A program made the translations under genes and the position numbers. The notes under the pieces are model-generated. The model did no database searches and was not told the DNA's origin. It saw only the letters and a program-made list of their open reading frames with translations. From Selaginella moellendorffii (Eukaryota; Plantae; Lycopodiophyta): a stretch of 64,000 nucleotides of DNA. Positions 5,808 through 45,449 of the stretch are shown here, piece after piece (position 1 is the stretch's first letter; the number at the start of each line of letters is the position of its first letter). The stretch lies in assembly GCF_000143415.4 (NCBI RefSeq), contig NW_003314267.1, positions 703,394 through 767,393 on the forward strand, written 5' to 3'.

Positions 5808-7823
5808 ATGCAGCGTTCGATCCAGACGCCAGATTTCTGTCAGGTAAGTGAGCTTTCGCAAAGGATTCCAAGCTAGGCCGACCGTTTTTCTTCCTAGTAG
5901 CTCGAGACCATCGATCGCAAGCAGACCAGGCTACGACGATACCTCGCCGGGCTCAAAGAATGCGGCAGCTCCAAGGATCTGGCAAGAGGGAAAAGAATCC
6001 ACAGCGAGGCCGTCCAGAATGGGGACGAGAGCAACATCTACTTGGCCAGCAGTCTCATCAGCATGTATTCCAAGTGTGGAGATCTTCCGGACGCGAGGGA
6101 AGTTTTCGACAGGCTTCCTCGCCACAACCGCGACGTAGCAGTCTGGACAGCCTTGATCATGGGCTACGCGGACAACGGCCTGGAAGATCGAGCACTGGAC
6201 GAGTTTTTCCGCATGGATTGCCCGCTGAATCCTCGACCATTCGTCGCTGCGCTCAAGGCTTGCTCGAGTCTGGCGGAGAAGGAAGAAGCCATACAGGATG
6301 GTGGTAAGGCTATGGCGATCAAGTCAAGGAGCCTCGAGAGGGGCCGGGAGATACACGCTCGGGCTTGCAGGCTTGGATTCGACTCTAGTGATGTTTTCGT
6401 GGGGAATACGCTGGTGGATATGTACGCGAAGTGCGGAAGCATGGCCGATGCTCGCAGAGCTTTCGAGAAGATCATGGCTCCAGATACGGTCTCCTGGAAC
6501 GCTCTAGTGCTGGGATATGCAACGAACCACGAAGAAGCAGTGGCCTTTGAGGTGTTCTCTCGATTTCTCTCGACTTGGCTCCAACCGGATCATTTGAGCT
6601 TTGTGGCAGTTCTCAAGGCATGCAGTAGCTTAGCAACGAAAGAAGTGGCTGCTCATAACAGGCTCGTCAAAGTTTTTGCTTTGGAGAAAGGCATGGCTGT
6701 TCATGCTGAGGCAGCAAGAAGAGGACTTGATACCAGCCTCTTCGTGGCCAGCAGTCTAGTAGACATGTACTCCAAGTGTGGGAGCATGGTGGACGCTCAG
6801 AGGATCTACAACAAGCTGGAGTCATGCAACGTTGTTCTTTGGACAGCGCTCATGCTGGGATACGCAGAAAATGGCGAAGAAGATCTGGCACTGAAGCTAT
6901 TCATAGAGCTAAGACCGAGAAATTGCCGACCAAATGCTCTGAGCTTTCTGGCTGCATCGAAAGCTTGCACCGGCCTCGCAGTGAAAGAAGAAATCCAACA
7001 CCAACAAGTGGAGACGATCAAGAGAAGGCCAGTAAAGATCAACTCTCTGGAGAAGGGGATGGCCGTGCACTCGGAAGCTATCAGGTGTGGCTGCTGCGAT
7101 CTCTTCCTCACGAGCAACCTGGTGGACATGTACGGAAAGTGTGCAAGCATGGAGGACGCTCAGCGGGCCTTTGACGGAATGGAGCGGCGAAACGCGGTTC
7201 TATGGACGGTACTTCTGGCGGGATACGTTGAAAACGGTGAAGGTGAAAAGGCTCGCGAGCTCTTCGCTCCAATGCGACGCGACGGATGCCATCCAAACTC
7301 GGCCTCATTCGTCGCAGCACTGGGGGCCTGCAGGGACGGAGTTTCGATCGAAACCGGCAGGGCCTTCCACGCTGATATTTGCCGGAGTGGCGTCGAGTGT
7401 GAGACACAGGTCGGCAGCAAACTCGTGGACTTGTATTCCAAGTCCGGGATGGTGTCCAAAGCTCACGAGGTATTCGATTCACTTCCAGAGAGGAACTTGG
7501 TGACTTGGACATCGCTACTGGCAGGATATAGTCGCGAAGGGAGGACGCGAGAGGTTTTCCATCTCTTCGGCGGGATGCTAGACGAGGGCCTCCAGGCGGA
7601 CAGGGTGACGATGCTGTGCCTTCTCACGGCTTGTAGCCATGCCGGGCTCGTGGAGAGGGGCCGTGAGCTTCTTAAGTCGATGAGCTCCAGGTATGGAGTG
7701 AGTCCTGGCGTGGAGCACTGCGAATGCATGGCCGATTTGCTGGAGAGAGCTAACGAGGCCGAAGCTGCGAGGGAGATGAGAAAGATGGTGGCCAGGAAAG
7801 AAAATCCAACAATAATAAACTGA
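5808..7823 (+). CDS. PLS-class pentatricopeptide repeat protein (no clear DYW)
   Basis: Repeated LVDMYxKCGS / VxWTALxxGY motifs. The frame extends upstream of 6042 to 5901. A probable 36-bp first exon lies at 5808-5843 (CAG|GTAAGT). Confidence 0.92.
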
Positions 7824-9522: not shown

Positions 9523-9748
9523 CTCTCTCTATAGATTGAAAGTTTAGTGGCTCGCTCGTGGCATGCTTGAAGGAATGAAACTCAGATCGTGGATTAACTA
9601 TAGAAGATCGATCATGATGGCTTCGTGGATTATAGTATGATGGTCAGGTTGGTAATCATGGCGATGCGTTGGAGGAAAATTTTCCTATGTAGATTCCACT
9701 TTGTTGGTATCTCATGGACTTTCGTAATATTTTTGAAATACTTTCATA

Positions 9749-10330
9749 ATGTCTATCTTAATAATTCGTATCTTCATGATCTTAGGAAAAACTCACCGCT
9801 CAAGCTTGCTAAAAGTCATGGTACATGCTTTATTTTGTTAAAGTGGAACTTATTCAGTAAAGTGGGACATTAATTAGCATGTGTCCACATGCCATTTCCT
9901 AGTACTTAATTAATATTTATTAATATTTCTATCAGTTTTTTAATTTATTTTTTTATATTTCACAATATTATAACACAAAATCATATGAAAAGTTTTTAAT
10001 TTATAAATTATAAAGCTAAAACTTTAATTTTTTATTGTTGTTATAAAAATGGCATGTGGCCACACACTATAAGTGGGATAATGAAAAATTCCACTTTAAC
10101 AAAATAAAGCATGTACCAGAATTACTATCAAATGGTCATCCCACCATTCCAGAATGCCGGGGGTTGTTTTCTCAGGATTGTTCACCAAACAAGCTACACT
10201 GGTTCCTAGATTTCACGTATCTATACAATAGAGAATTGATAGGCCTAATATACCAATTCAGCTCTTAACTGGACTCGAGCTTCTTGGACAAATAAGTATG
10301 ATAAAAGAAATTTCCTTGCAGTGGGTTTGA
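9749..10330 (+). pseudogene. Deleted, MITE-disrupted copy of the spherulin-4-like gene
   Basis: 9746-9823 aligns with 11536-11613 (start and signal peptide). About 10120-10165 and 10260-10325 align with about 11745-11780 and 12087-12150. Confidence 0.8.
9824..10113. mobile_element. MITE (Tc1/mariner/Stowaway-like), 290 bp
   Basis: Perfect 25-bp TIRs CATGCTTTATTTTGTTAAAGTGGAA and a TA target duplication. The empty site CATGGTACCAG is seen in the paralog near 11607-11617. Confidence 0.9.
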
Positions 10331-10665
10331 ATTTGAATATCTTTGAGTGTTACTTAATTTCTCAATTAGAATGAACTTAGAACCCTCGAGTTCATTAAGT
10401 TTTGTATTTGCCCGAACAAAGGTGTATCAACTAAATAAGGTTTTCAATGAAATTGTCAATAGAAAAAATCCAAAAATTATAAACTAAATGAATTTGCTTG
10501 TAGTACAATTCGTTATGCTTTAGTGTTCTCTAATCAGTATGCAAACTTTCATAAAAGAAACAAACATTCATACCATAAATTTCTTTCCAAGTAATTTCTA
10601 TAACTGATGGAGAATATTAAAAAAATCGTGGAATAGATAAGTTATAAATAAAATAATTTGTTTCT

Positions 10666-10917
10666 GTTTTCTTAATAGTAGTGTTATTCCTATTTATCAA
10701 TGTAATTGATAAAATGAAAGTTTATAATTATAAACATGTTTTTAATTTATAAACATATTGCATATCAACCATTCGATGGTAGAATAAACTATAATATACT
10801 AGAAAGTGTTTAGGAAAGTTTATAAATTATAAATACAAGATTAATCTAAATGAATAATAACTGTTAGATTGTAGAATATCTTAGAATATTCAAGCATATT
10901 CTAGCTATATTCACTGG
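10666..10917 (+). repeat. AT-rich dispersed repeat, inverted copy of 25823-26082
   Basis: Collinear reverse-complement similarity, e.g. ATTGCATATCAACCATT and ATACAAGATTAATCTAAATGAATAA. Confidence 0.75.
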
Positions 10918-11538
10918 CATCTTAGTCCCCTACAGTTTTGCCTAAGTAAACCAATAATTTGTATGTTGTCTAATGGCTTGCTATAAACTTTTTGTTGAAG
11001 GATTAAAAAAATATTAAACCAAAATCATATCAGAAAAAGTATATATTACAAATATACATAGAAAATAAAATGATTTAAACTTTAGAGTATTATTTTATTT
11101 CCTGGATGCTGGATCTATGCCCTTAGAAACATAAAAATAAAAAAAATATGAATCTATGCAACTAAAAGTAAAACATAATTGGAAATTAATGGGAATGTTG
11201 TGTAAATTCTCACAAATTTATAAAAAGAATAAATTAATATCTAAAACTTTATGTTTATATATACAAGAATATTCAAACATATGCTAGAAGAAGATAATAA
11301 TATCAATAGGTAGAGAACCACTTCTGGCTGTGTGGTGGATTTAGAGCTTTAGAAAAGATTGGTATGTGTGGTAAGATAAAGGAGACGTGTTGCTACAGAG
11401 CTACAAAATTGTCAAAAGTAAGATATTGCCTTATTGGTGATCAATTAAAAGCCCAACTCTATATAATCGTCTCATTAATTCAAAACATCTCACCCTCTCT
11501 CCTTTTTTACTTTCATGTTTAGTGGATCATATCCCATA

Positions 11539-12330
11539 ATGTCTCTCTTAGCAATTCTTATCTTCGCAATCCTAGGAAGAACTCACTGCTCAAGCCTGCT
11601 GAAAATCATGGTACCAGCATACATCTATCCATCTCCCAGCAATACTGCATGGCAGACCCTCACTACCCAAGCAGCCTAATTTCCATACTGCCTGGTTACA
11701 ATAATAAATCCCAATAATGGTCCTGGTACTTCTGTAATCTCAGACTACCAAAATGCCATCCAAGCTTTCAAGAATGCCCAAGGTCTCTTACTCGGTTATG
11801 TTCCCACAACATATGGCAACCGGGCATATGCAAATGTTATTTCTGATGTTGATAAATACTATAGCTTCTACCCCAATATCATTGGCATCTTTTTTGATGA
11901 GGCAAGCTCCAACAATGGCTCCCAAGGTTATTACCAGAACCTCTATAGATATGTGAAATCTAAGAGCTCATGTAGCTTGGTGGTGAATAATCCTGGGACA
12001 GCAACACTAGAATCTTATCTAATATATAATGGGTCACGAGTGACTGACGTGATCTGTGTCTTTGAGGGTAACAATACAGCACAAAGAGCTCTCGCTTGGA
12101 CTCAAGCTTCATGGACCAATAAATATGACCGAAGTAATTTCCTTGCAGTGGCTTACAATATCAGTAGTGGGGTTTACCAGAGTGTTATGGATCATGCTTA
12201 CTAGCAAAACACTGGATGGGTTTATGTTACTGATGATGGTGGCAATAATCCTTATGATAATATTCCACCTTATTTTGCAAACCAAGTAGCTTATGCAAGT
12301 ACTTATTCAAAGAACCAGAATTGTCCATAG
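11539..12330 (+). pseudogene. Spherulin-4 / GH135 (Sph3-like) secreted glycoside hydrolase with two in-frame stops
   Basis: One intronless frame of 263 codons: signal peptide, IMVPAYIYP, IINPNNGPG, LGYVPTTYG, GIFFDEA, VVNNPGT, ICVFEG, GWVYVTDD, NPYDNIP. Stops at TAA 11677 and TAG 12202. TATA-like TATATAA at about 11459. Confidence 0.85.
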
Positions 12331-13055
12331 AATATTATATAATGAGATAGATCGGTAGAGATGGATGTATAAAGGTCACCCCATGGGGCATCAGATCTAT
12401 GTACATATTTCCTAATATTGGCAAAGTTATTGCATGTTGTTGTTGTTGCTTCTAGAATGTCTTGAAGCTTGCTTAAGGTGGGTGACAAATTATTGTTGGG
12501 TAAAATGCAATTCATCAAGCCTGTAGGGTGGATGTTTTGATGATGAACTACATCTAGTCAAATTTCACATTTACTAATTAATTACCTTTTCTTGTAAAGT
12601 ATGGGCATTCTTAGATGATGATCTATTTCATTGCACACTAGAAAAGCATCCAACCTTTTATATTTGAAACTTATTTTGGAGGGACAGTAGCATTGGAGTA
12701 AGGAGTGATTTTATTGGAAACTAACCTCAAGTTAATTTAAAAACATAATGGGTCTATATTAATCCTAGATGCATATAGTAAGTTTTGATTCAAATTCTGT
12801 GAGTAAATTTTTAATGTTTGAATCTTGTTGTGGTGTCAAAATACACTTTATCCAATATAAGGAAATGACAAATACATAACAATGTAAGTCAATGCTATAG
12901 AAGTTTATGGCTTAATTTCCTCATATTTTTCCAATGGGGCTACTATTGTTGACTATGATGGAGGCAATAGGCTATTCTACCTCTCCATTTTGGGACTTGA
13001 GTTTTCTATATTTTACTTATATTGAACATGCTTAACCTTTAGATTTAATACTATT

Positions 13056-13243
13056 TGTGAGTGCATGGAATATAAAAAGGGAATACAAAAAATATGCATA
13101 TCAATTAGCCCAAAAACCCTAACTTATATACATGAGCGATTGATTTGGATTGAAACTAATTCAACAGCTACTAAAATCTCACTACACTAAATCTACACTA
13201 AATATTAATATATGGCATCGTAGCTGTACACTTGGACCTCACA
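13056..13243 (-). repeat. 3' LTR of the gypsy element
   Basis: TG...CA ends, directly after the PPT, homologous to 23995-24170. Confidence 0.85.
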
Positions 13244-15205
13244 TCACCCCCTCCTCTCAAAATAATAGAAGACTATTAAGGTTCTCTTGTGGATGGGCCA
13301 GGATTTGGAAGAACGTTAGGAGGAAGCATTGGCAGATATATAAGTAGTATTAATTGTTCTTGATCCTTTTGTATAAAGCATTTCAACTGTTGCACATATA
13401 TAATTTTTGGAGGATTGGCTTATTGAATGTCATGCCAAACTTCATAAATTTGTGGTCCAACTTGTTGTAACACCCGATATGGTCCTTATCACTAAGCAAG
13501 GAGCCTCTTAAATAAACCATATACCGTAAGATGGAAAAAACAGACTAACACCAAGTCATCCACTTTAAACTTTGCAGGTGGACGATAATGGGAGTTGTAG
13601 CGCCATTGTTGTCCCACTTGTACATATTTTAAGTGTTTGGCAAACTCCGTTCAGACAAGTGGAAGAATGCTCATCAAACACTGATCCCATGACTTAGCAT
13701 CGGCAATTTGTGGCAATCGTAAAGGTAAACCCAACTTCATTGGTAATATTGGATCATAATTATATAGGAGTTTATATGGTGAAGTATCAGCAAAACTTTG
13801 CACCCCTATAACATATGCATACCGAAGAGATGCCAAATAACCATCTCAATCCAAATGCTGAAAGTTTATATACTTCACAATCATTCCTTTGAATATCCGA
13901 ACAAGCCGTTCCACCAAGTTTTTTGATTGTGAATGATAAGCATTTGTGAAAGTGTGGTATATCCCCAATCGAGATGTTAAAATATGAAATGCCTTAGCCA
14001 TAAATGCAGGACCATTATCTGAAAGGATCTGCTTCGGATAAAAATGCTGGAACACCACTCGATTAAGGAGGAAGTATCTAACAGTAGTTGCAAAGATGCT
14101 AGCAAGAGCACGAACTTCCACCTAACGAGTTAAATAGTCAGAAGCAATAATAACATATTCATTGTTAGTAGTCGATCGTGGAAAAGGTCCTATAAAATCA
14201 AATGCCACAAACTCAAATGGATGGAAAATTGCAATTGATTCTAGTCATCCTTCTGTAGCACAAGGGGGAGTATTACGAGTTTGGCACTAAACAGAGTTAC
14301 ACATATACTGGATAACATCACTTCATATCTCTAGCCAATAGAAAGACTTGTGCAACTTCTCGGTCACATGATGATGTCCCATATGCCCATCTAGAACTGG
14401 AGAATCATGATAAGCATAGAGAAACTGTGGAATAAAGATGGAAGGCACCACCAACCGTAAATGACCATCAGAATCCATCCCCATAAAATAAAGAAAGCCA
14501 TTTTCAACATGATATTGAGATATAAATGCCAAAATGGCAAGTCATTAGTAAGTGATGTAGGATTCTCAAACCCATCTCGAAGCCTTTGAATCCATGGCTC
14601 AAGCTTTTGAGCCTTGCGAACCTCATCAAGAGAAGGTAGGTTTTGTTCTGCATCTTGTGGACATTGAACGTTATGTACAACAACCATCGACAGCATAGAA
14701 TCCTCATTTAAAAAATCCACAAATGCTGGAATAAGAGACTCGTCAGAAATATGAAAAGAGAGTGAAAAAGGAAGAAGAGCTTGAGAAAGGGCATTAACAT
14801 TAGCCATAGAACTATCTAGGCAATGAATAACATCAAAATTATATATTTGAAGCTTCAAAGTCCACTGAGAAGTACAACCAACTAGGTTCTTCTACTTCAA
14901 AATGAAGTAACGGCAGCATGATCACCTTTTAGGAACATCCGAGAACTATGTAGATATGCATGAAGTTTATCGAAACCTGAGACTCTTGGCAAACACTTCT
15001 TCTCTGTTGTGGAGTAATTCACCTCCACTGATTGTAATGTACCACTTATATATGCAATGGGATGGCGCTAACTAGGCACACTTGGGCTCTCTTGCATCAA
15101 CACTCCTCCAAAACTAATATTAAAAACATCTACATGCAAAATGAAAGGTTGAATGTAGTCAGGATATGCCAAAATCGAAAGAGTTGTTAATAGCTTTTTG
15201 AGATC

Positions 15206-18200
15206 GAGCTTTTAGTCCAAACGTGCTATGCTCGTTTGGCTTTCGCTTCGACCACTACCACATGGCACCCTTTCAGCTCCTCTTTGGGGCCTAGGGATTT
15301 TATGTCTCACATTATCTTGGGTACTATATTTCTCATGAGGGTTTGTAAGTTGATCTTAAGAAATTTATGGTTGTTCTAAAGTTTCCTACTTTGAAGTCTA
15401 TGAATGATGTGTAGCTCTTCTTGGGCAAAGTGCAGTATCTCAGTTATTTTGTGGATCATTTTTTTGATCGTACTACACTATTGCGAGCATTGTTGAAATC
15501 ATCAACTTATCTTTCATTTGGTCTCCAAATTATGAGTGAGTGTTCATGTGATTTGGAAAGTTGAGAGCAGGAGTGGAACTGCCAACAAAGGGCTCGAGGA
15601 ATGAGCACGGAGTAAGCAATAAGTAAGTCTCTAAAAAAAGGGGAAACAAAAGGACCAACATATGACATGTGGAAGGAGTCCAAGATGGAGTCTGAGATAG
15701 ACCTAAGATGGAGTCTGAGATAGACCCGAGATGGAGTCCAAGATGGAGTCTGAGATGGACCTGAGATGGAGTCCGAGATGGATCCGAGATGGAGTCCAAG
15801 ATGGAGTCCGAGATGGACCCAGGATGGAGTCTGAGATAGACGCGAGATGGAGTTTGAGATCGACCTGAGATGGAGTCCGAGATGAACCCGAGAAGGAGTC
15901 TGAGATGGAACCGAGACCGAGATCGAGATCGAGATCGAGGCTGAGTCTGAGTTTGAAACCAAGACCGAGTCCGAGTCTAAGTTTGAGTCCGAGTACTAAT
16001 ACAGGCTGTTGGGCAAAAGCCCAAAGCGATCATCCCCCAGAAGGGGGGGGGGGGGGAGGGGGGTTGTAGTGGGTTCCAAAAGTATAGTAGGGAGAGTGTG
16101 GGGGTTGAACCCCAATAGAGCCAGTTTCGCTAGGAAAGGCTAGTTTGGCCCAAGAAGGTTGTACCCAGGTGTTGGGTGATGGGATAACCACTGGGAAGTC
16201 CAAGGCTAGAGTGAATACGGATTGACAAGTGGGGTAGCTTGGTGAAGTGTTCAAGAGCCGACTCTAGTTCCCCTAGAAGATCGAATGGTCGATACTCCCA
16301 GTTCAAGTGTGGGTGGCACTACCTACTTGGATACCTGGTGTGGCTTAACAGAACCTCACTTTAAACCCATGGCTAGAGCACCCAAAGGTGGAAGGCGGGG
16401 AGAGTACTCACGAGGCTTGCATAAGGTTATGGTGTTCCGAAATGTTGTCTCAAAGTCCAAGACTATGGAAAGGAAGATGAGCAATCCTCTAATGTACTGA
16501 CCAAGGATACAGTCATGTGGTGAGGAAGTCCCAAAGGACCGTAGGACTTAGTGGTCGGGCCTATGGGCCTTGATCCAAAGGCAGTGTTGGCAAATATGGC
16601 TATGGATAGAAAGGGACTTGGTGGGGACCAGAAAAGGGATATTGGGGAAGGCTATTCCCCATGTCTACGGGCATCCTAAAAATGCTAAAGAGTGGATCTG
16701 GGATGATCACTCATGGATGGATGACTCAGTCTTTGAGAGACGGGACTGTGATGTAGGTGGTGTTAGACCACCAATGTGACCAAGGTGAAGGGGTATAGCC
16801 TTAGCGTAATGGGCTGATATGTCAGTGGTACTTTGAGATGTCGGTCATGAGATTGGACACATGGAGCACTTGGACCAAGTGCAAAGGCTAAGTGGCAAGG
16901 ATGCTATTCTTGGGGCTAGCAAGTCCCTAAGTTTGAAATAGGACTTATGGAGGTTATGAGTGAGACTCGTCCAAGTGATCGAAGGCGTGGTTAAGTTGAC
17001 TAAAGTAAAATGGAAAATTTAGTCATTTACAATTTGGTATCGGACCTATTCCTTAGTCTGATTTTTATTGGTGCTCAAGTATATCACCACTGGTGTTGGC
17101 ATCAAAAGGTCTTAGGAGTGGGCATATCCTTAGGGAGTAGCAAGTTGGGAAGACATGGCTCTCCACTATAGTTCATGTGTGAAATTGTAGACAAAGTGGT
17201 AGATAGAAAAAGGGCCAATAATAGAATAACTTTGGGATCTTGGGAACAGTATAAGGTTTTCCTCAGAGAGTTGAGGATGTGATCCAAATGAGCATTTGGC
17301 TTAGCAAACTGGCTAATGTAGTTGTGGTAAAAAACTATAGTTAGGATCACGGGAAAGATAGAGACTCCAAAACAATAAAGGAGTCACTGTAAGGAACCAA
17401 CTCCCCAAGGTGTTGTAGGCTAAAGGATCCCTAAAAGAATGACCGAAATGACAAAGAGTTCATCGAATAGGACCATCAAGACCGAGTCCGAGATCGGGTC
17501 CGAGATCGGGCCCACCCAAGAAAGTGCTTAAAAGCAGCTCCCACTCCCAAAAGGGAAACCAACTACGGTGTTCCCGGCTCATGTAGAGTGGTGCCCCACT
17601 TGAGTACCTTATGGCTCATTGGTCCTTGCCTTTCCTAGGGGTTTGGGCCTTCCCTTCAGGATGGAAGTGGTGGGGTAGAGATACCCATACTGGGCCATTA
17701 GGCCACGGTGTTTTGCCTCAGTATCCCGAAGCAAGTGTTGCATCCAAGGCTTGATTTAGAGGGTCCCATAATCAAGCTTTGTTGTACCAAGGGGTGTTAG
17801 GAACTTGGAGGCTTGGTGTGCTTAGCTGCTTGTGCCCGCGGGGAGTGTAGCTGAGCTTTAAGTCCAGTCTAACCCAGGGAGGGGGATTAGGAGAGATTTG
17901 GGAATTTGTGGATGGATGGCTAATGCTCTATTGCTCGTGCAGTGAGTAGTTGAAACCAAGTAGGAGCTGGTACAATAGGCGAGAACCTTGGCGAGGGAAC
18001 TTAGCAAAAGCCAAAGCAGTGTTGGTCGGATAGACGAAGTAAGCTGGCAAATTGGAAAGAAAAAATTTGTGACTTACAGTTATAAGATTATCCTCATATA
18101 GTTGAGGCTGGTGCTCATGAATTTGATATCGGAATTAATAACTGTGAGAGGTCAAATACGGATGAGAACACGAGTCCTTGAAATGGTAGCCGGGGCTACC

Positions 18201-21200
18201 TTTTATAAATGCTAGAACAAACCCAAGGAGTTCGGGGTGTGCTTAGAGGATGAGATGGCTCAAGTAAAGTCAAGGAATGGTCCTAAGGGATTGGTAAAAA
18301 CATTTGGACTGAGATGTGTTGTGCCCCACGGAGGATGGGGAGGATCATAAGATCCAAGTATGAAAATAGTGGGTATCTCAATGATAGAAGAATATGTCAT
18401 ACTAAAGTCGTGGGAAAGGTGTTCCCAGAAGAAAACAACTTTGACACAAAGTTGTGTGTAAACTCTATGGTGCAATGCTAACAGATAGTTGGCATAAGAA
18501 AGAATTGTATTGGTCTTGGCAAAGACCTAGACACAAGTAAGAAGTGTCATAAAGGTAGGCTCGTGTAGCCGATAGTGTGAAGACACCGAATGTGCCAAAG
18601 CGTGATGCCTTGAGGTCAAGTTGGCAAGTTCATAAGAACCCCTTCCCAAAGGAATCCTAACGAAAATGGGAATGGCATAGTCTACGTTGGAAGGCATGCA
18701 ATTAGAATGTGGTGATCTAAATAATGATGGAGGTGTGAAAACACTAGCAATGAGTTGTAAAATTGAACAACTATGAAGTAACTAAGCAAAAGGTGTAAAA
18801 TAATTCATTAAACTGGTAGAAGGTACCTAAGACTTCTTATTGGGATAAAAAAAATAAATATACCTTTGTAGGGGATAAATTGCTTATGTTGTGATATAGT
18901 AAATCAATGTCGTAAAAGAAATGTTCATTATCAAAGAGGTTATCATTGAGACACTCAAGCACTCTAAAACACCAAGAGGTGGTGTTTAGTGTCGTGAAGG
19001 CAATAGATAAGGCCTAAGGGACTAAGCCCCTAGTGAATGATAGATAAGAAGTGTTATCCAAATGTCCAAGGTTGCTGAGACAAAAGAAGTTTATCTACCC
19101 GAATTGGACAAAGCCAAGAATGGGGATTTAGCAAGGGTAGTAATGCGCATATATAGGCCTATAAGTAGCAATGTTAATCCCGATGTGTAGGATTATAAGG
19201 TGAGCATACCTAAATTAAACAACTACTCCCTAGACTATTAGGTAGGTTCATCCCTATAAATACTTGTTAAAGCATGGTAGAAAGTGCAAAGTTATCCTCC
19301 TAGTCTAAAGGAAAATAACCGAAGGAAATGTGTGAGGCCAAAAGCAAGTAGTAAAGGGATAGAACCAAACCATAGAAATCGACAAGCATAAAGTAATACT
19401 AGCATGTATTACCCTTTCCATCCTTGGCATCTAACCAATATTCATCAATGGTTTGACACTGAAGGCTCACCATGCTTTGTCCATCCTCTAAGGAGCATAG
19501 TCTTTCCAACATAAAGACTGATTCGACCACCCGTGGTGGTTCTCTCACTTTTATTGATTTAGTTCTTGCTAAACTTGTTAGAGACATTTTTTCTTTCTCA
19601 ATCCTGCTACCCATTCTTGAGTAGTTTTGGTTTCCATTGATATAACCTTTGCACTTTGGAACTTTTAATTTTGACTTTTCGAAGTCAATTTCCTGGATGT
19701 TTCCAACACTTTGCATGGCATATATCATGCACATGCCACTTTCCCCTCCTAGGAAGTTCTCTACTTGAGGACACCATCATCCTCTTTTCTATCTTTTGCC
19801 CTCTTTGGCACTAAATTCCAGTTATTATAATTTTTGTAGGGTTGTTTATGGCTCTATCATTTGGCTACTTTGCCACTCCGTGCCTGGGAGTTTTCACTTC
19901 TCCAAATTGGAGCACTTGGGAATCCATCCTTGGAAGTACACTTCCTTTCCCACAATCTATTATCATTCAACACATTAGTGTTTCTCGACTAACTTTGCCA
20001 TTTGGATTCTCTCCAATGAATTTTATGTCCCAAAATTGGCCACTAGTCTTTTCCTTCTATTCGTTGATTGTTGCATCAAGCAACATAGGCTCATTACCTC
20101 CATCCTTGGGGTATTCTTTCGGTTCCATGGCAAAGGCTCCACTTTACCAAGTCCAGAGGGTGCTCACCCATAATAAGTCTCTTTAGCATTCTTTGTTATG
20201 GGCTCTATCCATAGCCCAACTTCACAACCCTTTCATGGGTCTTTCCTAGAGACTAGTTCCTTAGACTTACTATACCATCACATTGACACTACTGATTTCC
20301 CTTTTTGGTGTCTTTCCCATTTGGTCATTTTGACTAAGTCACGCCATTACCAACAGTTCAAATTATCACTTTGAACTAGGAATCTTATTCCTTAACCAAA
20401 CAAGAACCTTATCTTTATTTAGCCACAAGATCACCTAGTGATTTCACCTTGGTCACCTTGACAAGTTTGCTAATAAGTACTAAGTCTTCCAAATCGTTAA
20501 CTTGTTGACCATGACCCTGAGAGCATCCCCCACACTTAGTGGTGCACCCAAGTTAGCCCTTTCGACCAAGGGTCCATAGCAACTAAGATTGGGTGTCCCC
20601 ATCTCATTCACCACGTCCTTGGTGCTACTTACAGTATGTTGAGCTTTCACACAAAACAATCTAACCATGCATCACGACTCTAGGGCATCCCCCACTTGGC
20701 GGTGTGCTCAAGTTAGTCTCCTTACTAAGAGTCCATGACCATTGAAAAATGAGTGTTCTTATATTCCAAACCATCACCTCGCCCTAGTGAGTTGGGACTC
20801 GAACCCAAGCACTAGAGGGTTAGGACTCAAACCTAACCTCCATATATGCATTTATGGATGGCATCACATAGGATGCCTAACGTGGCTCCCTACGCCGGTG
20901 CACCAACTTATACTTAAAGCGCACTACAAATCACAGCTTAGGAATTTAGTTCCTTTATACTACCAAGTCCTCTCACTTGACAAGTCTGTGATCATAAATG
21001 AACTCCTCTATGCTTGGCCCCATGGGCCATCCCTTTTGAAGTTAGCACCTTCAACTAGGGGATTTGTTCCCCTGACTTGCCAATCTCACTTAGCAAGTCA
21101 TCCAACCAACGTAACATAGTTTCATACAGAAGTGTGAAAGTCCTTGACCATTGACTTTAGTTCAAAGCCATCCCTTTAAACATTCAAGAACTACTTCCCC

Positions 21201-21892
21201 AACCTTGATAGCCTTGCCTTATGGCAAGCTTCAAGGCCATGCTTCTGCTATGCCACTCTGATTTCGTGCATTTTATGAATCATTTACACTTGGCTTTCTA
21301 GGTACTAAGCTACTTAGAATTGTCTTTAGGAACCTTGAAGGAACTCTGTCCTTTAACTTGCTAAGGCTTCTTCTTTCACAAGCTTTTTAATTACCATATG
21401 GTCTAACATGGATAATTCTATGCTTTAGACTCTCCATGGCATCACGGTTGCTAGTAACAATATGCTCAAGCACCCACTTGATTCTCCACTCCCAACTTAC
21501 ATAATTACCCTTGGTTACACATGCCTAATAATAACCTAACACATTTCAAATTCTCATTAGCCATTGGAATATCAACTTGATTTTTTCTGGTCCAAGTTTA
21601 AGAAAGCCCCCCCCTGGCCCCCCCTCTTGTCACTTTATATTGTATATAAAATAGTTTATCATTCAATAACGACATCGAACTTCGTCTATGGGTGGTGGAG
21701 TTGTGAGACATAAAATCCCTAGGCCCCAAAGAGGAGCGAAAGGGTGCCACATGGTAGTGGCCGTAATGAAAACTAAACAAGCATAACATATTTAGACTAC
21801 AAGCTCTAACTTGGAAAATTGAGAGCGGGAGTGGAACTCTCAACAAAGGGCTCAAGGAATGAGCATGGAGCAAGCAATAAGTAAGTCTCTAA
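15206..21892 (+). mobile_element. Nested LTR retroelement, probably non-autonomous, inserted into the host RT
   Basis: The LTR starting TGTGAGACAT at 21702 follows a purine-rich tract and runs into the gap. It matches 15206-15311 (inverted) plus 15550-15632. Putative 5' LTR end at 17031 with a Met-type PBS-like TGGTATCGGACC at 17035. Confidence 0.7.
15675..15995 (+). repeat. 12-bp tandem repeat (GAGATGGAGTCC-like) inside the LTR
   Basis: More than 20 degenerate units, decaying to 6-bp GAGATC/GAGTCC units. A few similar units recur near 17480-17510. Confidence 0.9.
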
Positions 21893-21992
21893 NNNNNNNN
21901 NNNNNNNNNNNNNNNNNNNNNNNNNNNNNNNNNNNNNNNNNNNNNNNNNNNNNNNNNNNNNNNNNNNNNNNNNNNNNNNNNNNNNNNNNNNN
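21893..21992. other. Assembly gap (100 N)
   Basis: Run of N. Confidence 1.
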
Positions 21993-23994
21993 AAATAAAT
22001 ACTCCTATCAGGCTTTCATCACAAGATGAGGTTCACATGCCCAGGGACTGCACAAGTTTCAAATAACACCCTTTTCCAATATCTTTTTGACATTTGCACG
22101 TAAAATCTTGATCTCTTTATATGACTGATAACAAACATGAATCTTGATTGGATGAGCATCCCTAATTGGAATCGGATGACATGTGGCAATCTTGGCCTTA
22201 GACGATAGATCAAATTCAAATAGATTAGCATACTCCTTCATGAGTTGGTCAACTACTACAACACAAATACTATCGAAAGGATCGGAAAAGGGAAGAGCGG
22301 AAAAAGATAGAAACATAGGAGGAAGTCGTGGGGAGACAAAAGTAATGGAAGCAAAGGGATGAAAAAGTACGGAAGTGAGAGGAATGAATAAAATATAAGG
22401 AAGTATAAAATGAGCGAGAAAAGCCTCAAAATCATACTTGGCATGATTGCACTGGAACTAATCCATACCAAAATGAGGTCAAAAGCTTAACTCGACACCA
22501 CCCACAATGACTACAACCCAAGCTTGAGATCACCCACACACACAACTAGGTCCACCTCATCCTGTGCACATGCATGTGTATGGCCATTGCTATAAAGAAT
22601 GAAAACTGGCTCCGGTGCACAATGCAAATGTAAATAGCAATGTGTGGTAACATGTTAAGCAATAGAAGATAAACTCGAACCTGTATCAACCAACACAGAG
22701 AGAATCATAGGAGACCTTTTGTTATAAAAATGATCTTAGAGAATAAATACTGGATGAACTGGTGCCAAGTGAACCTCTTGATGAAACTCCCAAAAGAAAG
22801 ATAGAGGGATCACTGACTTATTCATGCAAGATCTCTTCGTTACTTGTGCAACTCTTTGTTTCCCAAATGCATCTCAGTATCTTGACCTTCTACTTCAGCA
22901 GCATGAATAAGATGTTATGAACGCCAAGGTCTCCATCTAGGAAATGGAGGTTGCCAATCTGGAAAAATGTCGACAATGCCGATAAGTGTGACAAACTTCA
23001 TCACACGTGCAACAGCGAACATTATGACCACAACCACATCCTCGCTTTTATCCTTGAACTCGAGTAGCAGTAGCATCAACCTCTATTAGAATAGCACCAT
23101 TCCATAAAGTGGAGTTGAAGGACATGCAGCAAGAAGTGGAAAAGAAGACATCTCATAATGTTATACCAATCAAAGAGCATTATCAAGGGTGGCTAGAATA
23201 AGTGCATGCAAAAGTCTGACAAGATCTTGATGAAGGGTTGGCCATAACAATTTTAGCTTGATTTGCTCCTATATATTTGGCTCCATACGAAGTAAGAAAC
23301 TTTGGAAACGAAAGCCAAATTACATTACTGACTTAGAGGGCCTTTGACGAAGACGATGCAATTGTTGGAAGGTGTCATCATAATCATTGGTATATCCAAA
23401 TGCATATTTGAAAATGTCCGAAAAAACACTCAAATCCCCACAAATGGTTGCACTAAAACCATTGTACCACTATAATGCCATCCTTTAAAAACATGTGGGA
23501 AACTTATACAAATGTCAAGCATCATCCCAAAAATGATATATGGTAATCACCATGAAGTGATCAAATTAATGGTACATATCATCCCTAAGATTCCCACAGA
23601 AGAATTCCGGCCAAACATGAGGATTGGCACCAAGAGCAAGAAGAGTTGTACCATATATCGTGAATGCCACTATCAACTAAGTTTGGTTGTTCAATTACAA
23701 ACACATAGCATCAAACATTTGCACTAACTATTGCTCCAAAGTCAAAGGAAGAGGAGACTATTGTTTTTCCATGAAGATGAATGAAAAAGAAAAAGTAAAA
23801 AAAGAGAAATGAAAAAAAAAATTAAAAGGAAAGGGAGATCTAGACAATGCAAAAGTTAAATCTAAACCAAAATCCTGAAAGGAAAAAATAAAAGAAAGGA
23901 AATAGAAAAAGATGATACAAAAGTTAAATCTAAATCAAAATCCCAAATCTAAAACTCCTCAGGAACAATCAAAAGTGCCCCTAATCTTTATTAA

Positions 23995-24170
23995 TATGAG
24001 TGCATGGAATATGGAAAGGGAATACAAAAAATATGCATATCAATTAGCCCAAAAACCCTACTTTATATACAAAAGTGAGTGGTCTATATTGAAATCAATC
24101 CCATAGCTACTAAAATCCCACTATGCTAATATTAATATATGGCATTGTAGCTGTACACTTTGACCTCACA
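23995..24170 (-). repeat. 5' LTR of the gypsy element with adjacent degenerate tRNA-Ala PBS
   Basis: Homologous to 13056-13243. It is followed on the minus strand by TAATAAAGATTAGGGG, close to TGGTGGAGATGCGGGG. Confidence 0.82.
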
Positions 24171-24858
24171 CATTTTAATTTATCAATATGTTTTTTTTAA
24201 TTACCTTAGTGTCTTGGTGAGCCAAGAGCATGAAATTATGCAATGAAATCAAATATAGGGTGCTTTTACTACTCATTTTACAACTTATGGTCAATATAAA
24301 AGCTGGGAAATTGAAATGCATTCCCATTTTGTGTCAAGTGTAAAGCTTTTCATTATTTTTTTTTTCTTTGATTCAGCCATTTCCAATGTTGAGAGTGTAA
24401 AGAATAATTAAAAGTAATGTAGCAATGCTTAAAATAGATATTATATACTTTCAAATGGAAGTTTACTGATCACTAGCACCTAAAGAAAATGAAGTACTTG
24501 GTAAGAGTCAAGCAGTGTAAAAGATAATATAAACTAAATGTTCTAGTATCAATCCTTCTATTATCTTCTTCTTGTAGATTTTCTTAATACAAAATTCTTT
24601 GAGTGGCTAGAAAATTCATAATAAGCTATATGTTATAATAATACATACTAACAAGCAAACAAAGAAAAAAAATATTTATATATTATAATAATATATTATT
24701 GAATCTCAATTATTATAGACTAGCAAAGAATCTAGCTACACTAGACTAAATGGAAATAAATATTTTAAAAATTTTAATAGGATAGAAATGATAATATTTA
24801 TGATCTCATCTTGATGATAAATCTAAACCCACAAATATATATAATAAAATAATTTTTT

Positions 24859-28106: not shown

Positions 28107-29189
28107 TTACCCCTCCATACCATGGGTTGCGGTGGGCTCTAGGGTTAGGTTATGCTCTTCCTCCTCCACGGCCCGGAGAGCTCGCTGGAGCAGGGCCACA
28201 GCGTGATCGATCTCCCCTAACGATTCGTAGATGCCAGCAGCCTCGACGAGGCCGCTAACAAGCGCATCTGCCGGCTCGCTCGTCCTGTCGTAAATTCGCG
28301 ACGCTCTCTCGCAGAAGATCCGCGCGGCGCCCACATTCCCTAGCTTCAAGCGGAGATCCGCGAGACTGAGGTAGACGGATCCCACTGCAGCGTGGCCCTC
28401 GCCCTCGATCCTCGTGAAGATTTCCAGCGCCGTGTGGTAAGCGATGTCCGCGTCCTTGAACCGGCCCAGCGACGCGAGTGTGTCGCCAATGCAGGCCTGG
28501 ATTGATGCCCAGTCCAGGCGCGATTGGGAAGGGTCAATGATCGAGGCTGCCCTTTGGAGATCCCTTAGCGCGGATTTGTGGTCGCCCCTTGCGCTAGCGA
28601 TGAGCGCCATGAGATTCCTATCGCTAAATTCCTCTTCTCTTAGGAACAAGTCGCTGCTCCTCTCGTGGATTTTGAGGAGCTCCTTGGACACCTCCTCGGC
28701 TCTCTCAAGCTCCATTGCCTGTGATCAGCAGGGAATTGTCACAAAACAAGAGTCTTTCTTTTAGCATACCTGGAGGTGTGATCTCGCCAAGAACCGGCAA
28801 GTTTCGGCGACGACGCGATCGAGATGGGCCTGCTTAGCAAAGTGGTAGCCTGTGATTGACCCTTGCTCGCTGCTCATGAGCGAGAAACCATCGCCTAAGA
28901 TCGAGGATCCAGGAGCTACTTGATCTTGGCAATCGCCCACTTCCACTGCCAGGCAACGATTGAGAGCTTTGATGGCCTCCGCGAACTCGCCCGGCTTGCA
29001 ATGAGCGTCGGCCAGTGCTTGGTGGCTCAAGACGAGCTCCACACCATAGCTTTTGTCCGATATCTTCGCATCCTCGCTCTGGAGCCTCTGGAAAAAAATC
29101 ACCGCTTGCGACGATTTAGCGAGCTTGAGGCTGTTGGTTTTCCCCAGGTTCAAGCCTCGCCTCCTCACACTCTTGGATGCCGCGCTCAT
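28107..29189 (-). CDS. TPR protein (kinesin light chain-related-like), two exons, possibly C-terminally truncated
   Basis: Exons 29189-28770 and 28718-28107 are joined by a 51-bp GT-AG intron. KLC-type TPRs (IGDTLASLGRFKDADIAY, GEGHAAVGSVYLSLADL). Confidence 0.78.
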
Positions 29190-43640: not shown

Positions 43641-45449
43641 TCAACTTATGCCCGCGGAGTGAGCCACCGTCGCAGCGTTTTCCTGGATTAGCTGCAGTTT
43701 CTGCAGCGTATCCCTGTGCTTCTCTAGCACCTCCGGCTGTGCTTTCTGTTCTTCGAGATGCTTCACCACCTCAGTCTGGCATTTTATCGCCTTGTCCCAC
43801 CTGATAATAAGCAAAAGAGCAAGTTTCAAGCTAGAGAAAGACAAAAATAAGACAAAGTTTTACCTGTTGAGCGAGGAGTACGCAGTGACCATGTTAATGG
43901 TTGCGGCCACTGTGTTTGGATGGCCAGTGCCGAAATGCTTCACGGAAATCACCTTCGCTCGCTCAAACTGCCCCGAAGCCAATACCAAGTTCTTAAGACC
44001 CAAGTTGGCAACCCCCATTGTGTTCAACATGTCGCCGAGATCAGGATGATCTATGCCAATTTTGTCTTCAATCAACTTCACACCACGCCCAAGAATCGAC
44101 ACGGCAGTCTCACTCTTCTCCATGACCAAGTAGATGTGTCCAACCCGGGCATACGTTTCTGCCAAAGAAGTTACTGCTTCTGGGAAGTTCACGTAAATCC
44201 TTTGAGCTTCCTCAAAGTGATCGATGGCACTGTCATAGTCCTTCACCGCCTCAAAAAACGTTGCGAGTTCAGCAAACGTCTCAGCATCTTTCAGAGTGAC
44301 GCCCTTGTTCTTTCGCAAGATCATAGATGCCTCTTCGGTGTGTGCAATTGCCTCGTCCGCCTCGTTTTCCAGCACGCAGATTCTCGCGAAGCAGGCGTGA
44401 GCAAATCCCTTCAGGCGGCCACGAACTTCCTCATCGTCCAGAACTGCATTAAGAACCTCTTTTGCTTCCTCGTACTTCTCCGAGTCCATGTAACACTGCG
44501 CAAGCTCCAGCTCAATCCACCTCGCATCCTCGTTCCTCCCATGCTTCAGGGCAAGCTCTTTCACCACCTTGAGCTCCTCGATAGACTTTGGAAGCTGCTT
44601 CAAGCCTCTGTACACGACTCCGAGCAGCCTTCGAGACCTGGCCTCATCGAAAGTTCCGTCTTCAGCAGAATCCAGCGCTTTCCTGCACTGCTCGGCAGCC
44701 TCTGGATATCGACCGAGCTCTACCAGGGCCTCGGCAGTGTGGATGTAGTCGTCCACAAATGCCCGCTTATCATCGCAAAGCTTCTCCTTCTTCGCGATGC
44801 TTGAGAGAAACAGCGGCAGAGCCTCCTGGAACTTCCGAGTAGCAACCAGAACTTCGGCCACCCGAATCTCCGTCTCTGCCCGTATAAGTTCAGCAGTCTC
44901 ATCCTCGTCCTTGTCAAGGAGCTCCAGCACCAGCTTGAGCTTTTGCATACACTTTGCGTAGTCCTTGCTAAGAAAAAATCCGTCCGCCTCTAGGTGTAAG
45001 CATAAAGCATGGAAGACCGAGCCTTGCGGGACGAGCTTTGCGGCCTTTTCAGCGCAAAGCAAGACCTTGTCCGCAGATCCTTGTATGGTGTAGAGCTTCC
45101 CCAAACAAAAGAAGTCCTGGAAGCTCTTCTCTTCGTCCTTGGCCGAGTCCACCATCTCCAGGCACTCGTTCAAATCCACGAACCTGATCTTCGACAAAGT
45201 TTCACCTTTACGGACATTGAGGATCTTCCTCTTTGCAAGTGTCTCGACATCTGTTTCCGGGCATTCCAGGAGATTTTTCATCCATTTCCACAATCGAGAG
45301 CTTCCAATGTTCTTGCTCGATCCAGTGCCTGGTGACGATTCCGGCTCCGATGGGAAAGATTGAGCGCTGGAAAATCCTCTCCCGCGCGCTATGGCTCGCA
45401 TCGTACCTCCCGATCGCCCGCGCCCCAGCGCCCGCGCCAATGCAGCCAT
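43641..45449 (-). CDS. TPR protein (kinesin light chain-like repeats) with a probable mitochondrial presequence
   Basis: Arg-rich N-terminus (..RGRGFSS), many TPRs (GIDHPDLGDMLNTMGV, GHPNTVAATINM), and a second exon at about 43801-43641. Confidence 0.85.

What the first reader, a model, noticed from the sequence alone, without database searches (positions are those of the whole stretch)
11539..12330. Hidden spherulin-4/GH135-like secreted glycoside hydrolase gene, a candidate horizontal acquisition
Reading through two stops gives a full-length, intronless 263-codon protein with a signal peptide and all the spherulin-4 motifs (INPxNGPG, GYVxTxYG, GIFFDE, NPGT, FEG, YVTD). This family (Aspergillus Sph3, Physarum spherulin 4, bacterial homologs) acts on GalNAc-rich exopolysaccharide and is not a standard seed-plant family. 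A secreted plant version could attack microbial adhesion or biofilm polymers, making it a candidate undescribed defence system. Both stops are one C>T change from Gln codons and there are no frameshifts, so inactivation looks recent and intact paralogs are plausible.
Basis: partly seen in the sequence, partly recalled or inferred. Interest (0 to 1): 0.85.

Follow-up and report, generated by a model that had tools for sequence, protein, structure and literature searches.

The report
Null allele of spikemoss GH135 gene
This is one haplotype's broken copy (two premature stops) of a Selaginella gene for a probably secreted sugar-cleaving enzyme of bacterial ancestry; the other haplotype still carries the intact, already annotated gene, so the locus is a real but modest case of a transferred gene being lost.

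Summary
Window 11539-12330 (+) is an intronless 263-codon frame with in-frame TAA (11677) and TAG (12202). It matches Pfam Spherulin4 (115.9 bits, E 2.7e-33) and keeps the three Sph3 catalytic residues.

The genome is the lycophyte Selaginella moellendorffii, not a seed plant. The gene is only partly "hidden". The collinear partner scaffold GL377715.1 carries an uninterrupted 267-codon version, annotated as spherulin-4 (XP_024522685.1 / EFJ05707.1). It is 97.8% identical with no indels and reads CAA and CAG at the two stops. Silent divergence (0.029) matches the neighbouring genes, so I read this as the null allele of a heterozygous locus.

A scrambled older relic copy lies 1.2 kb upstream, with a haplotype-specific 292-bp MITE-like insertion.

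In ML trees the lycophyte and fern proteins form one clade (98/88). It is sister to a bacterial pair (98/96) and nested among bacterial sequences. Fungal Sph3 is only about 25% identical. This supports an ancient bacterial origin.

The scan found this family before on other DNA of this genome (s1-421006, s1-402794). The defence role and the substrate are untested.

The parts
11539..12330 (+). Intronless GH135/Spherulin4 reading frame: 263 codons plus stop, broken by two nonsense codons. This is the null allele.
   Evidence: It is 97.76% identical (18 differences, no indels) to the intact 267-codon ORF at L006:10001-10804.
11539..11607 (+). Signal-peptide-like leader: 23 codons with a hydrophobic core (LLAILIFAIL), ahead of the first barrel strand (MVPAY).
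   Evidence: The maximum 9-residue Kyte-Doolittle score is 3.48. Fern and lycophyte homologues have equivalent leaders. No dedicated signal-peptide predictor was available.
11677..11679 (+). Premature stop 1: TAA at codon 47 (CAA Gln in the other haplotype).
   Evidence: X2 reads C here, and the X1 contig confirms T.
11689..11691 (+). TGC Cys where the other haplotype and all 9 other plant homologues have Arg (a CGC>TGC change at a CpG).
11896..11901 (+). GAT GAG, the Asp-Glu of GIFFDE. Equivalent to Sph3 Asp-166/Glu-167. Retained.
   Evidence: Profile alignment to 5d6t with a chain offset of 32. The catalytic residues are named in PMC10485009. The Asp is invariant in the 34-sequence alignment A2.
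12064..12066 (+). GAG, the Glu of VFEG. Equivalent to Sph3 Glu-222. Retained.
   Evidence: Invariant in A2.
12202..12204 (+). Premature stop 2: TAG at codon 222, where the other haplotype has CAG and all plant homologues have an invariant Gln (YQQN).
12328..12330 (+). Terminal TAG. The other haplotype reads TGG and runs on for 4 codons (WNII). Relatives end at this position (...YLP / ...YLPS), so this stop is probably the original one.
11460..11465 (+). TATA-like box about 75 nt upstream of the ATG, as expected for a eukaryotic-type promoter.
   Evidence: Pattern match only. Its function is inferred.
9745..10327 (.). Scrambled relic of a second, tandem GH135 copy. The 5' end is at 9745-9824 (+), followed by pieces at 10124-10158 (+), 10163-10225 (inverted) and 10270-10327 (+). 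The pieces are 77-84% identical to the gene. Both haplotypes carry the relic.
9821..10112 (.). 292-bp MITE-like insertion with ~30-46-nt terminal inverted repeats, inside the relic. It is present only in this haplotype and is a high-copy element.
   Evidence: Inverted repeat I1. X2 skips 9820>10113 and shows depth ~10^4 over it. The equivalent gap in L006 is 134 nt against 430 nt here.

Best explanation
The stretch is a nuclear Selaginella moellendorffii gene of glycoside hydrolase family 135 (Pfam Spherulin4). In this haplotype two C>T nonsense mutations (Gln47, Gln222) have inactivated it, and an Arg>Cys change sits at a plant-invariant residue. The other haplotype (GL377715.1) keeps an uninterrupted 267-codon gene, annotated as spherulin-4. 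The intact form is inferred to encode a signal peptide followed by a (beta/alpha)8 barrel with the Sph3-type Asp/Glu...Glu catalytic residues. By analogy with Sph3 it would be a secreted retaining endo-alpha-1,4-N-acetylgalactosaminidase-like enzyme acting on a GalNAc-rich polymer. The window's allele would stop after 46 residues and give no enzyme, although it may still be transcribed. The locus arose by tandem duplication. The upstream copy decayed long ago and is shared by both haplotypes, and the surviving copy is now being lost. The plant family as a whole (lycophytes plus ferns) descends from a bacterial gene acquired anciently. Shown here: family membership, the lesions, collinearity with the intact haplotype, and the tree topology. 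Inferred: secretion, substrate, direction and date of the transfer, and transcription.
For: Family: Pfam 115.9 bits. The PDB profile hit to Sph3 5c5g/5d6t has E 5.7e-26 and aligns FFDE and VFE to D166/E167/E222. The AlphaFold model of the intact allele has pLDDT 92.9. Its best Foldseek match is Sph3 at TM 0.77, E 4.5e-13, with the next fold near TM 0.5.

Allelism: L006 (GCA_000143415.2 GL377715.1) has the same gene order, PPR then Methyltransf_29-like then GH135 then TPR. It aligns collinearly at 95-97% over about 10 kb. The CDS differs at 18 of 804 nt with no indels. dS is 0.029, against 0.035 (PPR) and 0.013 (methyltransferase-like) for the neighbours, and the flanks are 96.9-97.5% identical. 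An independent DNA run holds only one version of the locus, at flank-level depth.

Relaxed constraint: 13 nonsynonymous against 5 synonymous differences. Omega is 0.57 without the stops, against 0.25 for the PPR neighbour. Ten of the 18 changes are C>T or G>A toward the window.

Genuine plant locus: PPR, LRR receptor kinase and TPR genes surround it.

Bacterial ancestry: in two careful ML trees the 16 plant rows form one clade (98/88-89). It is sister to P0170+P0013 (98-100/96-99) and nested among bacterial sequences, including Cohnella zeiphila, a Ruminiclostridium MAG and a Bacteroidetes MAG. P0170 sits among ABC-transporter, DeoR and GH4 genes on a 64% GC contig. Plant proteins are 46-60% identical to these bacterial ones but about 25% identical to fungal Sph3. 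Named plant members are only Selaginella, Adiantum (two species), Ceratopteris and Pteridium.
Against: Allelism rests on the assembly holding both haplotypes (my own knowledge of the S. moellendorffii v1 assembly) and on one coded DNA run. A very recent segmental duplication would give the same alignment. The second stop (12202) has no independent read support, because X1 ends at 12021 and the X2 rows beyond 11882 were not shown. Transcription rests on a single 481-nt contig from a run whose RNA label is a guess. Two true RNA-seq runs gave no reads, which is no test. P0170's gene is 55% GC on a 64% GC contig, and it is closer to plant proteins than to any other bacterial protein. A plant-to-bacterium transfer for that sister pair therefore cannot be excluded. 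Absence from seed plants, bryophytes and algae is inferred from ranked hit lists, not from an exhaustive survey. No enzymatic or secretion evidence exists for any plant member.
Confidence: 0.78

Rival explanations
1. The window copy and the intact GL377715.1 copy are recent paralogs (a segmental duplication of at least 25 kb), and the window copy is an ordinary duplicate pseudogene.
For: Divergence of 3-5% in parts of the region, with large rearrangements or insertions between window 13-24.6 kb and L006, is higher than I would expect on average between the two haplotypes. X2 is a third sequence variant, which shows that the locus is variable.
Against: X2 holds only one version of every position at flank-level depth. 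Silent divergence equals that of the neighbouring genes. The other GH135 locus is likewise present on two scaffolds of this assembly (2.47 Mb and 6.18 Mb), as expected if both haplotypes were assembled.
Confidence: 0.13
2. The gene is functional in this haplotype too, because the two stops are sequencing errors, are removed by RNA editing, or are read through.
For: The frame is otherwise perfect, and every conserved residue and catalytic residue is kept.
Against: An independent run's contig reproduces the TAA exactly. If that run is RNA, it also shows no U-to-C correction. Editing in Selaginella is organellar and runs C-to-U (my own knowledge, and PMC4174432 listed), which is the wrong compartment and the wrong direction. 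Two tandem readthrough events plus an Arg>Cys change at an invariant residue are unlikely to leave an active enzyme.
Confidence: 0.03
3. The plant GH135 family was inherited vertically from an early eukaryotic or streptophyte ancestor and lost many times, and the bacterial look-alikes (P0170/P0013) took it from plants.
For: GH135 also occurs in fungi and in Physarum, the name-giver. P0170's gene has a GC content 9 points below its contig and is nearer to plant proteins than to other bacterial ones.
Against: The clade of plants plus P0170 is nested within a large and diverse bacterial radiation: 5568 representatives in total, and the top 150 are almost all long multidomain or metagenomic proteins. 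Fungal Sph3 is only 24-25% identical. No seed-plant, bryophyte or algal protein appears among the best 120 hits of either profile search. Both Selaginella loci are intronless, and the Adiantum gene span (816 nt for 271 residues) leaves no room for an intron.
Confidence: 0.1
4. The stretch is bacterial contamination of the assembly.
For: It is intronless and has a bacterial-type closest outgroup.
Against: It lies between plant PPR, LRR-kinase and TPR genes on one contig. It is flanked by high-copy plant repeats and is found collinearly on a second scaffold and in an independent DNA run. A TATA-like box and a eukaryote-style leader are present.
Confidence: 0.01

Closest known systems
Selaginella moellendorffii spherulin-4: XP_024522685.1 (P0001) and EFJ05707.1 / SELMODRAFT_431316 / UniProt D8TC72 (P0363), on GL377715.1
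   Same: The same locus on the partner haplotype. The CDS is 97.76% identical in nucleotides with no indels. It has the same neighbours and the same upstream relic copy.
   Different: It is intact: CAA and CAG where the window has TAA and TAG, Arg instead of Cys at codon 51, no MITE in the relic, and TGG instead of the terminal TAG (a 4-residue extension). Neither public model looks complete. XP_024522685.1 starts at Met24 and so lacks the leader. EFJ05707.1 splices away the natural C-terminus.
Selaginella GH135 array paralogs: SELMODRAFT_403642-403644, SELMODRAFT_411700, XP_024531904.1 (scan finding s1-421006)
   Same: Same family, intronless, with signal-peptide-like leaders, and in the same plant clade.
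   Different: Only 55-56% identical in protein sequence. They sit at a different locus and are intact, with GC3 of 52% against 37% here. The lineage in this window sits on a long stem (0.85-0.97 substitutions per site) as sister to all other plant members.
Aspergillus Sph3, founding member of CAZy GH135 (PDB 5C5G, 5D6T)
   Same: The (beta/alpha)8 barrel (TM 0.77). [quoted passage not shown]
   Different: 24-25% identity. Sph3 is described as membrane-bound and is encoded in the five-gene galactosaminogalactan biosynthetic cluster (PMC12054363). The plant gene has a leader that looks cleavable and no such neighbours. It is a family member, not a Sph3 orthologue.
Bacterial 'spherulation-specific family 4' proteins: metagenomic P0170/P0013, Cohnella zeiphila WP_185129019.1, the Bacteroidetes MAG protein with a T9SS tail (L001), the Ruminiclostridium MAG multidomain protein (L002)
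   Same: 46-60% identical across the whole domain, with shared motifs and the closest tree position.
   Different: They lie in bacterial operon contexts and are often fused to secretion tails, Fn3 or carbohydrate-binding modules. The plant genes are single-domain and have eukaryotic leaders.

Membership tests
Pfam PF12138 Spherulin4 / CAZy GH135 | Sequence match to the family profile above the curated threshold | tested here: met
   115.9 bits against a cut-off of 30.2 for piece 11680-12201. Piece 1 matches profile positions 1-22 at E 6e-4. The Atlas feature search also returns Spherulin4 clusters.
Pfam PF12138 Spherulin4 / CAZy GH135 | (beta/alpha)8 barrel like Sph3 | tested here: met
   Tested on the intact allele P0001, which is 95.5% identical in protein to the window's frame. 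The model has pLDDT 92.9. Its best PDB match is 5c5g Sph3 at TM 0.77, E 4.5e-13.
Pfam PF12138 Spherulin4 / CAZy GH135 | [quoted passage not shown] | tested here: met
   The profile alignment to 5d6t places FFDE and VFE on these residues (residues from PMC10485009). The window keeps GAT GAG at 11896-11901 and GAG at 12064-12066.
Pfam PF12138 Spherulin4 / CAZy GH135 | Retaining endo-alpha-1,4-N-acetylgalactosaminidase activity | not testable with these tools
   No plant or close bacterial member has been assayed in any paper I could find.
Functional (expressed, translatable) gene | Uninterrupted open reading frame | tested here: not met
   Stops at codons 47 and 222 in the window. The frame is uninterrupted in the partner haplotype L006:10001-10804.
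Sph3 orthologue (fungal galactosaminogalactan biosynthesis) | Encoded in a cluster with GAG synthase, deacetylase, Ega3 and epimerase genes; membrane-anchored | tested here: not met
   The neighbours are PPR, Methyltransf_29-like, TPR and LRR-kinase genes. Identity to Sph3 is 24-25%. The plant clade is nested among bacterial sequences.
Horizontally acquired plant gene (bacterial donor) | Plant clade nested in bacterial diversity with support, patchy plant distribution, and a genuine host genomic context | tested here: met
   Trees (98/88 and 98/96). Named plants are only lycophyte and ferns. The host context is shown. Caveats: no fungal or amoebozoan sequences were in the tree, and the root is assumed.

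The most novel reading that the evidence does not exclude
Lycophytes and ferns kept a bacterially derived, secreted GH135 enzyme as an extracellular weapon or tool against GalNAc-rich microbial matrix polymers (fungal galactosaminogalactan, Pel-like bacterial exopolysaccharide). This divergent second locus would then segregate functional and null alleles in Selaginella, in the way presence/absence polymorphisms do at defence genes. That would make it a natural knockout for testing the function.
Probability: 0.15. Interest if true: 0.7.

Novelty: new member of a known kind. Interest (0 to 1): 0.36.

Why it matters
On its own, the window's copy is a dead allele of an annotated gene, so it is of limited weight. 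Three things add some value.

First, it shows that Selaginella has a second, strongly diverged GH135 locus besides the tandem array the scan reported earlier.

Second, this locus is caught in the act of being lost. There is an old scrambled relic, then an intact allele and a null allele side by side in the sequenced plant, and possibly a third lesion in another accession.

Third, the heterozygous null gives a ready-made natural knockout for asking what a bacterial-type GH135 does in a vascular plant.

No paper in the searchable library mentions GH135/Spherulin4 in any plant. The family-level story of an ancient bacterial gene kept only by lycophytes and ferns therefore appears undescribed, although it is visible in public annotation.

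Tried and rejected
**Searches that found nothing**
- NCBIfam gave no meaningful hit.
- Exact-sequence contig look-ups for P0001 and P0003 found nothing. The look-up succeeded only through the older model P0363.
- Cluster look-ups gave no taxonomy for the top metagenomic hits.
- Literature searches combined spherulin, Spherulin4, PF12138 or GH135 with Selaginella, fern or lycophyte. I also searched the Ceratopteris genome paper's supplements. None found any plant GH135 report. One search failed on a term-length rule.
- A search of the scan's own findings by sequence was blank.

**Reads**
- Two RNA-seq raw-read runs (X11, X12) put no reads on the 3.4 kb. The tool marks this as no test, so it is not evidence of silence.
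- The read-laying table was cut after 40 rows. The state of X2 at 12202 and 12329 is therefore unknown.

**Readings rejected**
- Contamination, stop-codon editing or readthrough, and assembly error at stop 1 are all rejected. The reasons are given under the rival explanations.

**Not significant**
- The C>T/G>A excess toward the window allele is 10 of 14 transitions. It is suggestive but not significant on its own (one-sided binomial about 0.09, my arithmetic).

**Handling of the broken frame**
- The frame was searched piece by piece. In the tree script it was read through with X at the two stops only.

Full report
**1. What is in the sequence**

Window 11539-12330 (+) translates into 263 codons plus a terminal TAG. 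It has exactly two internal stops: TAA at 11677-11679 (codon 47) and TAG at 12202-12204 (codon 222). There is no frameshift. The other five frames carry 11-24 stops, and none of 2000 shuffles had fewer than 5.

- The 174-residue middle piece hits Pfam PF12138 Spherulin4 at 115.9 bits, E 2.7e-33, against a cut-off of 30.2.
- The 46-residue first piece matches the first 22 profile positions.
- The last 41 residues are too short to score.

**2. Which genome, and is the gene hidden?**

The best database match to the middle piece, at 97% identity, is "spherulin-4 [Selaginella moellendorffii]". So the window comes from a lycophyte, not a seed plant.

That protein is XP_024522685.1. An older model of the same locus is EFJ05707.1 / SELMODRAFT_431316. 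Both lie on the 278,539-bp scaffold GL377715.1 of GCA_000143415.2. I fetched that locus as L006. The evidence that it is the partner haplotype is as follows.
- It has the same gene order as the window: a PPR gene, a Methyltransf_29-like ORF on the minus strand, the GH135 gene, and further on a TPR gene.
- It aligns collinearly at 96.9% over 7.2 kb and at 95.0% over 2.8 kb. Beyond window ~13 kb there are insertions and rearrangements.
- L006:10001-10804 is an uninterrupted 267-codon ORF. It differs from the window at 18 of 804 positions and has no indels. It reads CAA and CAG where the window has TAA and TAG.
- Synonymous divergence of the GH135 pair (0.029) matches the neighbouring PPR gene (0.035) and the methyltransferase-like ORF (0.013). 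The flanks are 96.9-97.5% identical.
- An independent DNA run (X2) contains only one version of the whole locus, at the depth of its flanks. It has C at 11677 and lacks the MITE described below.
- The published assembly is known to contain both haplotypes of the sequenced plant (my own knowledge). The other GH135 locus also appears on two scaffolds.

From this I conclude, at about 0.85, that the window carries the null allele of a heterozygous locus and that GL377715.1 carries the intact allele.

**3. Nature of the lesions**

- Of the 18 differences, 13 are nonsynonymous and 5 are synonymous.
- Ten are C>T or G>A in the direction from the intact allele to the window.
- Polarising against nine other plant homologues shows that Arg51>Cys and Gln222>stop hit residues invariant in the plant clade. 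They are therefore derived in the window.
- The window's terminal stop coincides with where the relatives end. The TGG plus four extra codons in the other haplotype is probably the derived state.
- Apart from the stops, none of the 13 invariant and 25 nearly invariant columns of a 34-sequence plant-plus-bacteria alignment is altered in the window.

Omega is 0.57 with the stop codons excluded, against 0.25 for the PPR neighbour. This hints at relaxed constraint, but the counts are small.

X2 is a third haplotype. It reads G at 11631, where the window has A and L006 has T, and it shows a 4-nt deletion at 12300. If real, that deletion would alter the last ~9 residues.

**4. Surroundings**

A second copy of the gene lies 1.2-1.8 kb upstream, in ruins.
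- Its 5' end, with the same leader, is at 9745-9824.
- Further pieces lie at 10124-10158 (+), 10163-10225 (inverted) and 10270-10327 (+).
- The pieces are 77-84% identical to the gene.
- Both haplotypes share this relic.

A 292-bp element with terminal inverted repeats splits the relic in the window only. It is absent from L006 and from X2, and it belongs to a family with depth ~10^4 in X2.

The gene sits in an AT-rich patch (31-35% GC). Its GC3 is 37%, against 51-76% for neighbouring genes and 52% for the intact array paralogs.

**5. What the intact protein is**

- The N-terminal 23 residues have a strongly hydrophobic core, and all fern and lycophyte homologues have equivalent leaders. Secretion is inferred from this, not shown.
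- A profile of 34 plant and bacterial sequences hits only Aspergillus clavatus Sph3 in the PDB (5c5g/5d6t, E 5.7e-26). With the chain offset of 32, the alignment places the FFDE Asp-Glu on Asp-166/Glu-167 and the VFE Glu on Glu-222. These are the putative catalytic residues of Sph3 (PMC10485009).
- The AlphaFold model of the intact allele is confident (pLDDT 92.9). Its top structural match is Sph3 at TM 0.77, and every other fold is near TM 0.5.
- Sph3 and PelA hydrolase domains are retaining endo-alpha-1,4-N-acetylgalactosaminidases (PMC10485009; PMC12054363).

The most likely activity of the intact plant enzyme is therefore hydrolysis of an alpha-linked GalNAc-rich polymer outside the cell. 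The window's allele would terminate after 46 residues and cannot make this enzyme.

**6. Origin**

The family is very large, with 5568 50%-identity representatives at E<=1e-3. The best non-plant hits are long multidomain or metagenomic proteins.

Named plant members are Selaginella (this locus and a tandem array at another locus), Adiantum capillus-veneris, Adiantum nelumboides, Ceratopteris richardii (three tandem genes) and Pteridium aquilinum.

Several bacterial proteins, all from clearly bacterial gene neighbourhoods, are 46-60% identical to the plant proteins.
- One is from a Bacteroidetes MAG and carries a T9SS tail.
- One is a multidomain protein from a Ruminiclostridium MAG.
- One is the metagenomic P0170, which sits between ABC-transporter, DeoR and GH4 genes.

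Fungal Sph3 is only 24-25% identical.

Two careful ML trees (LG+C20+F+G4) give the same picture.
- The 16 plant or plant-like rows form one clade (98/88-89).
- That clade is sister to P0170+P0013 (98-100/96-99).
- The whole group is nested among bacterial sequences, including Cohnella zeiphila.
- Within the plant clade, the lineage of this window (window plus intact allele) sits on a long stem (0.85-0.97) as sister to all other lycophyte and fern sequences.

That last position could reflect an old paralog or a fast-evolving one attracted to the base of the clade.

This supports a single ancient bacterial acquisition, at or before the common ancestor of lycophytes and ferns, followed by loss in seed plants. 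Three caveats apply.
- The tree holds no fungal or amoebozoan sequences.
- Absence from other plants rests on ranked hit lists.
- P0170's gene has 55% GC on a 64% GC contig and is closer to plant proteins than to any other bacterial protein. The sister pair could itself be a secondary recipient.

**7. Expression**

One run whose RNA label is only a guess (X1) has a 481-nt contig identical to 11541-12021, including the TAA, and nothing on the flanks. That pattern looks like a transcript of the null allele. Two genuine RNA-seq runs gave no reads on the 3.4 kb, which the tool marks as no test. Transcription is therefore possible but not shown.

**8. Comparison and verdict**

The object is a member of GH135/Spherulin4: profile, fold and catalytic residues are all met. 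It is not a Sph3 orthologue, because there is no GAG cluster, identity is about 25%, and the clade has bacterial affinity. In this window it is not a functional gene.

The scan had already reported the family on other DNA of this genome (s1-421006, s1-402794). My independent trees agree with that follow-up's reading of a bacterial origin, and I saw two intact intronless copies at that locus (L005:8392-9207 and 13354-14157).

No paper in the searchable library mentions this family in plants. Public annotation, however, already names the intact allele.

What is new here is modest:
- a second, divergent GH135 locus in Selaginella;
- its allelic null;
- the older relic next to it.

Noticed in passing
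window 9745-10327: A scrambled relic of a tandem second GH135 copy. The leader-encoding 5' end is preserved at 84% identity, the middle part is inverted, and large parts are deleted. The other haplotype shares it.
   Followed up: yes
window 9821-10112: A 292-bp MITE-like element with terminal inverted repeats. It is an insertion polymorphism: present in this haplotype, absent from L006 and from run X2. The family's depth in X2 is about 10^4.
   Followed up: partly
window 10626-10967: A very high-copy AT-rich repeat, with summed contig depth up to 4.7x10^4 in DNA run X2 and many variant joints. The element type was not determined.
   Followed up: no
window 12300 (run X2): The DNA run X2 carries a third haplotype of the gene. 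It has Gln at codon 47 but a 4-nt deletion at 12300, which would change the last ~9 residues. This may be a second, independent lesion at the locus. It lies 46 nt from the contig end, so it needs checking.
   Followed up: partly
L006:10001-10804 (GL377715.1): Both public models of the intact allele look imperfect. XP_024522685.1 starts at Met24 and so omits the in-frame leader. EFJ05707.1 predicts an intron that replaces the conserved C-terminus with a downstream ORF, which corresponds to window 12434-12526.
   Followed up: yes
L003:3918-4766: This is the bacterial protein closest to the plant clade (P0170, 54-60% identical to plant proteins and at most 51% to other bacterial ones). Its gene has 55% GC on a 64% GC contig and long intergenic gaps on both sides. 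It may be a recent arrival there, possibly from a plant.
   Followed up: partly
window 13000-24600 versus L006:11476-16487: The two haplotypes differ by several kb of inserted or inverted sequence just downstream of the gene, with blocks of 82-83% identity in opposite orientation. This is probably transposon turnover.
   Followed up: no
window 6042-7823, 29999-32626, 49633-52728: Ordinary plant genes flank the locus: two PPR proteins and an LRR receptor-like kinase. TPR proteins lie at 28107-28715 and 43860-45449.
   Followed up: partly
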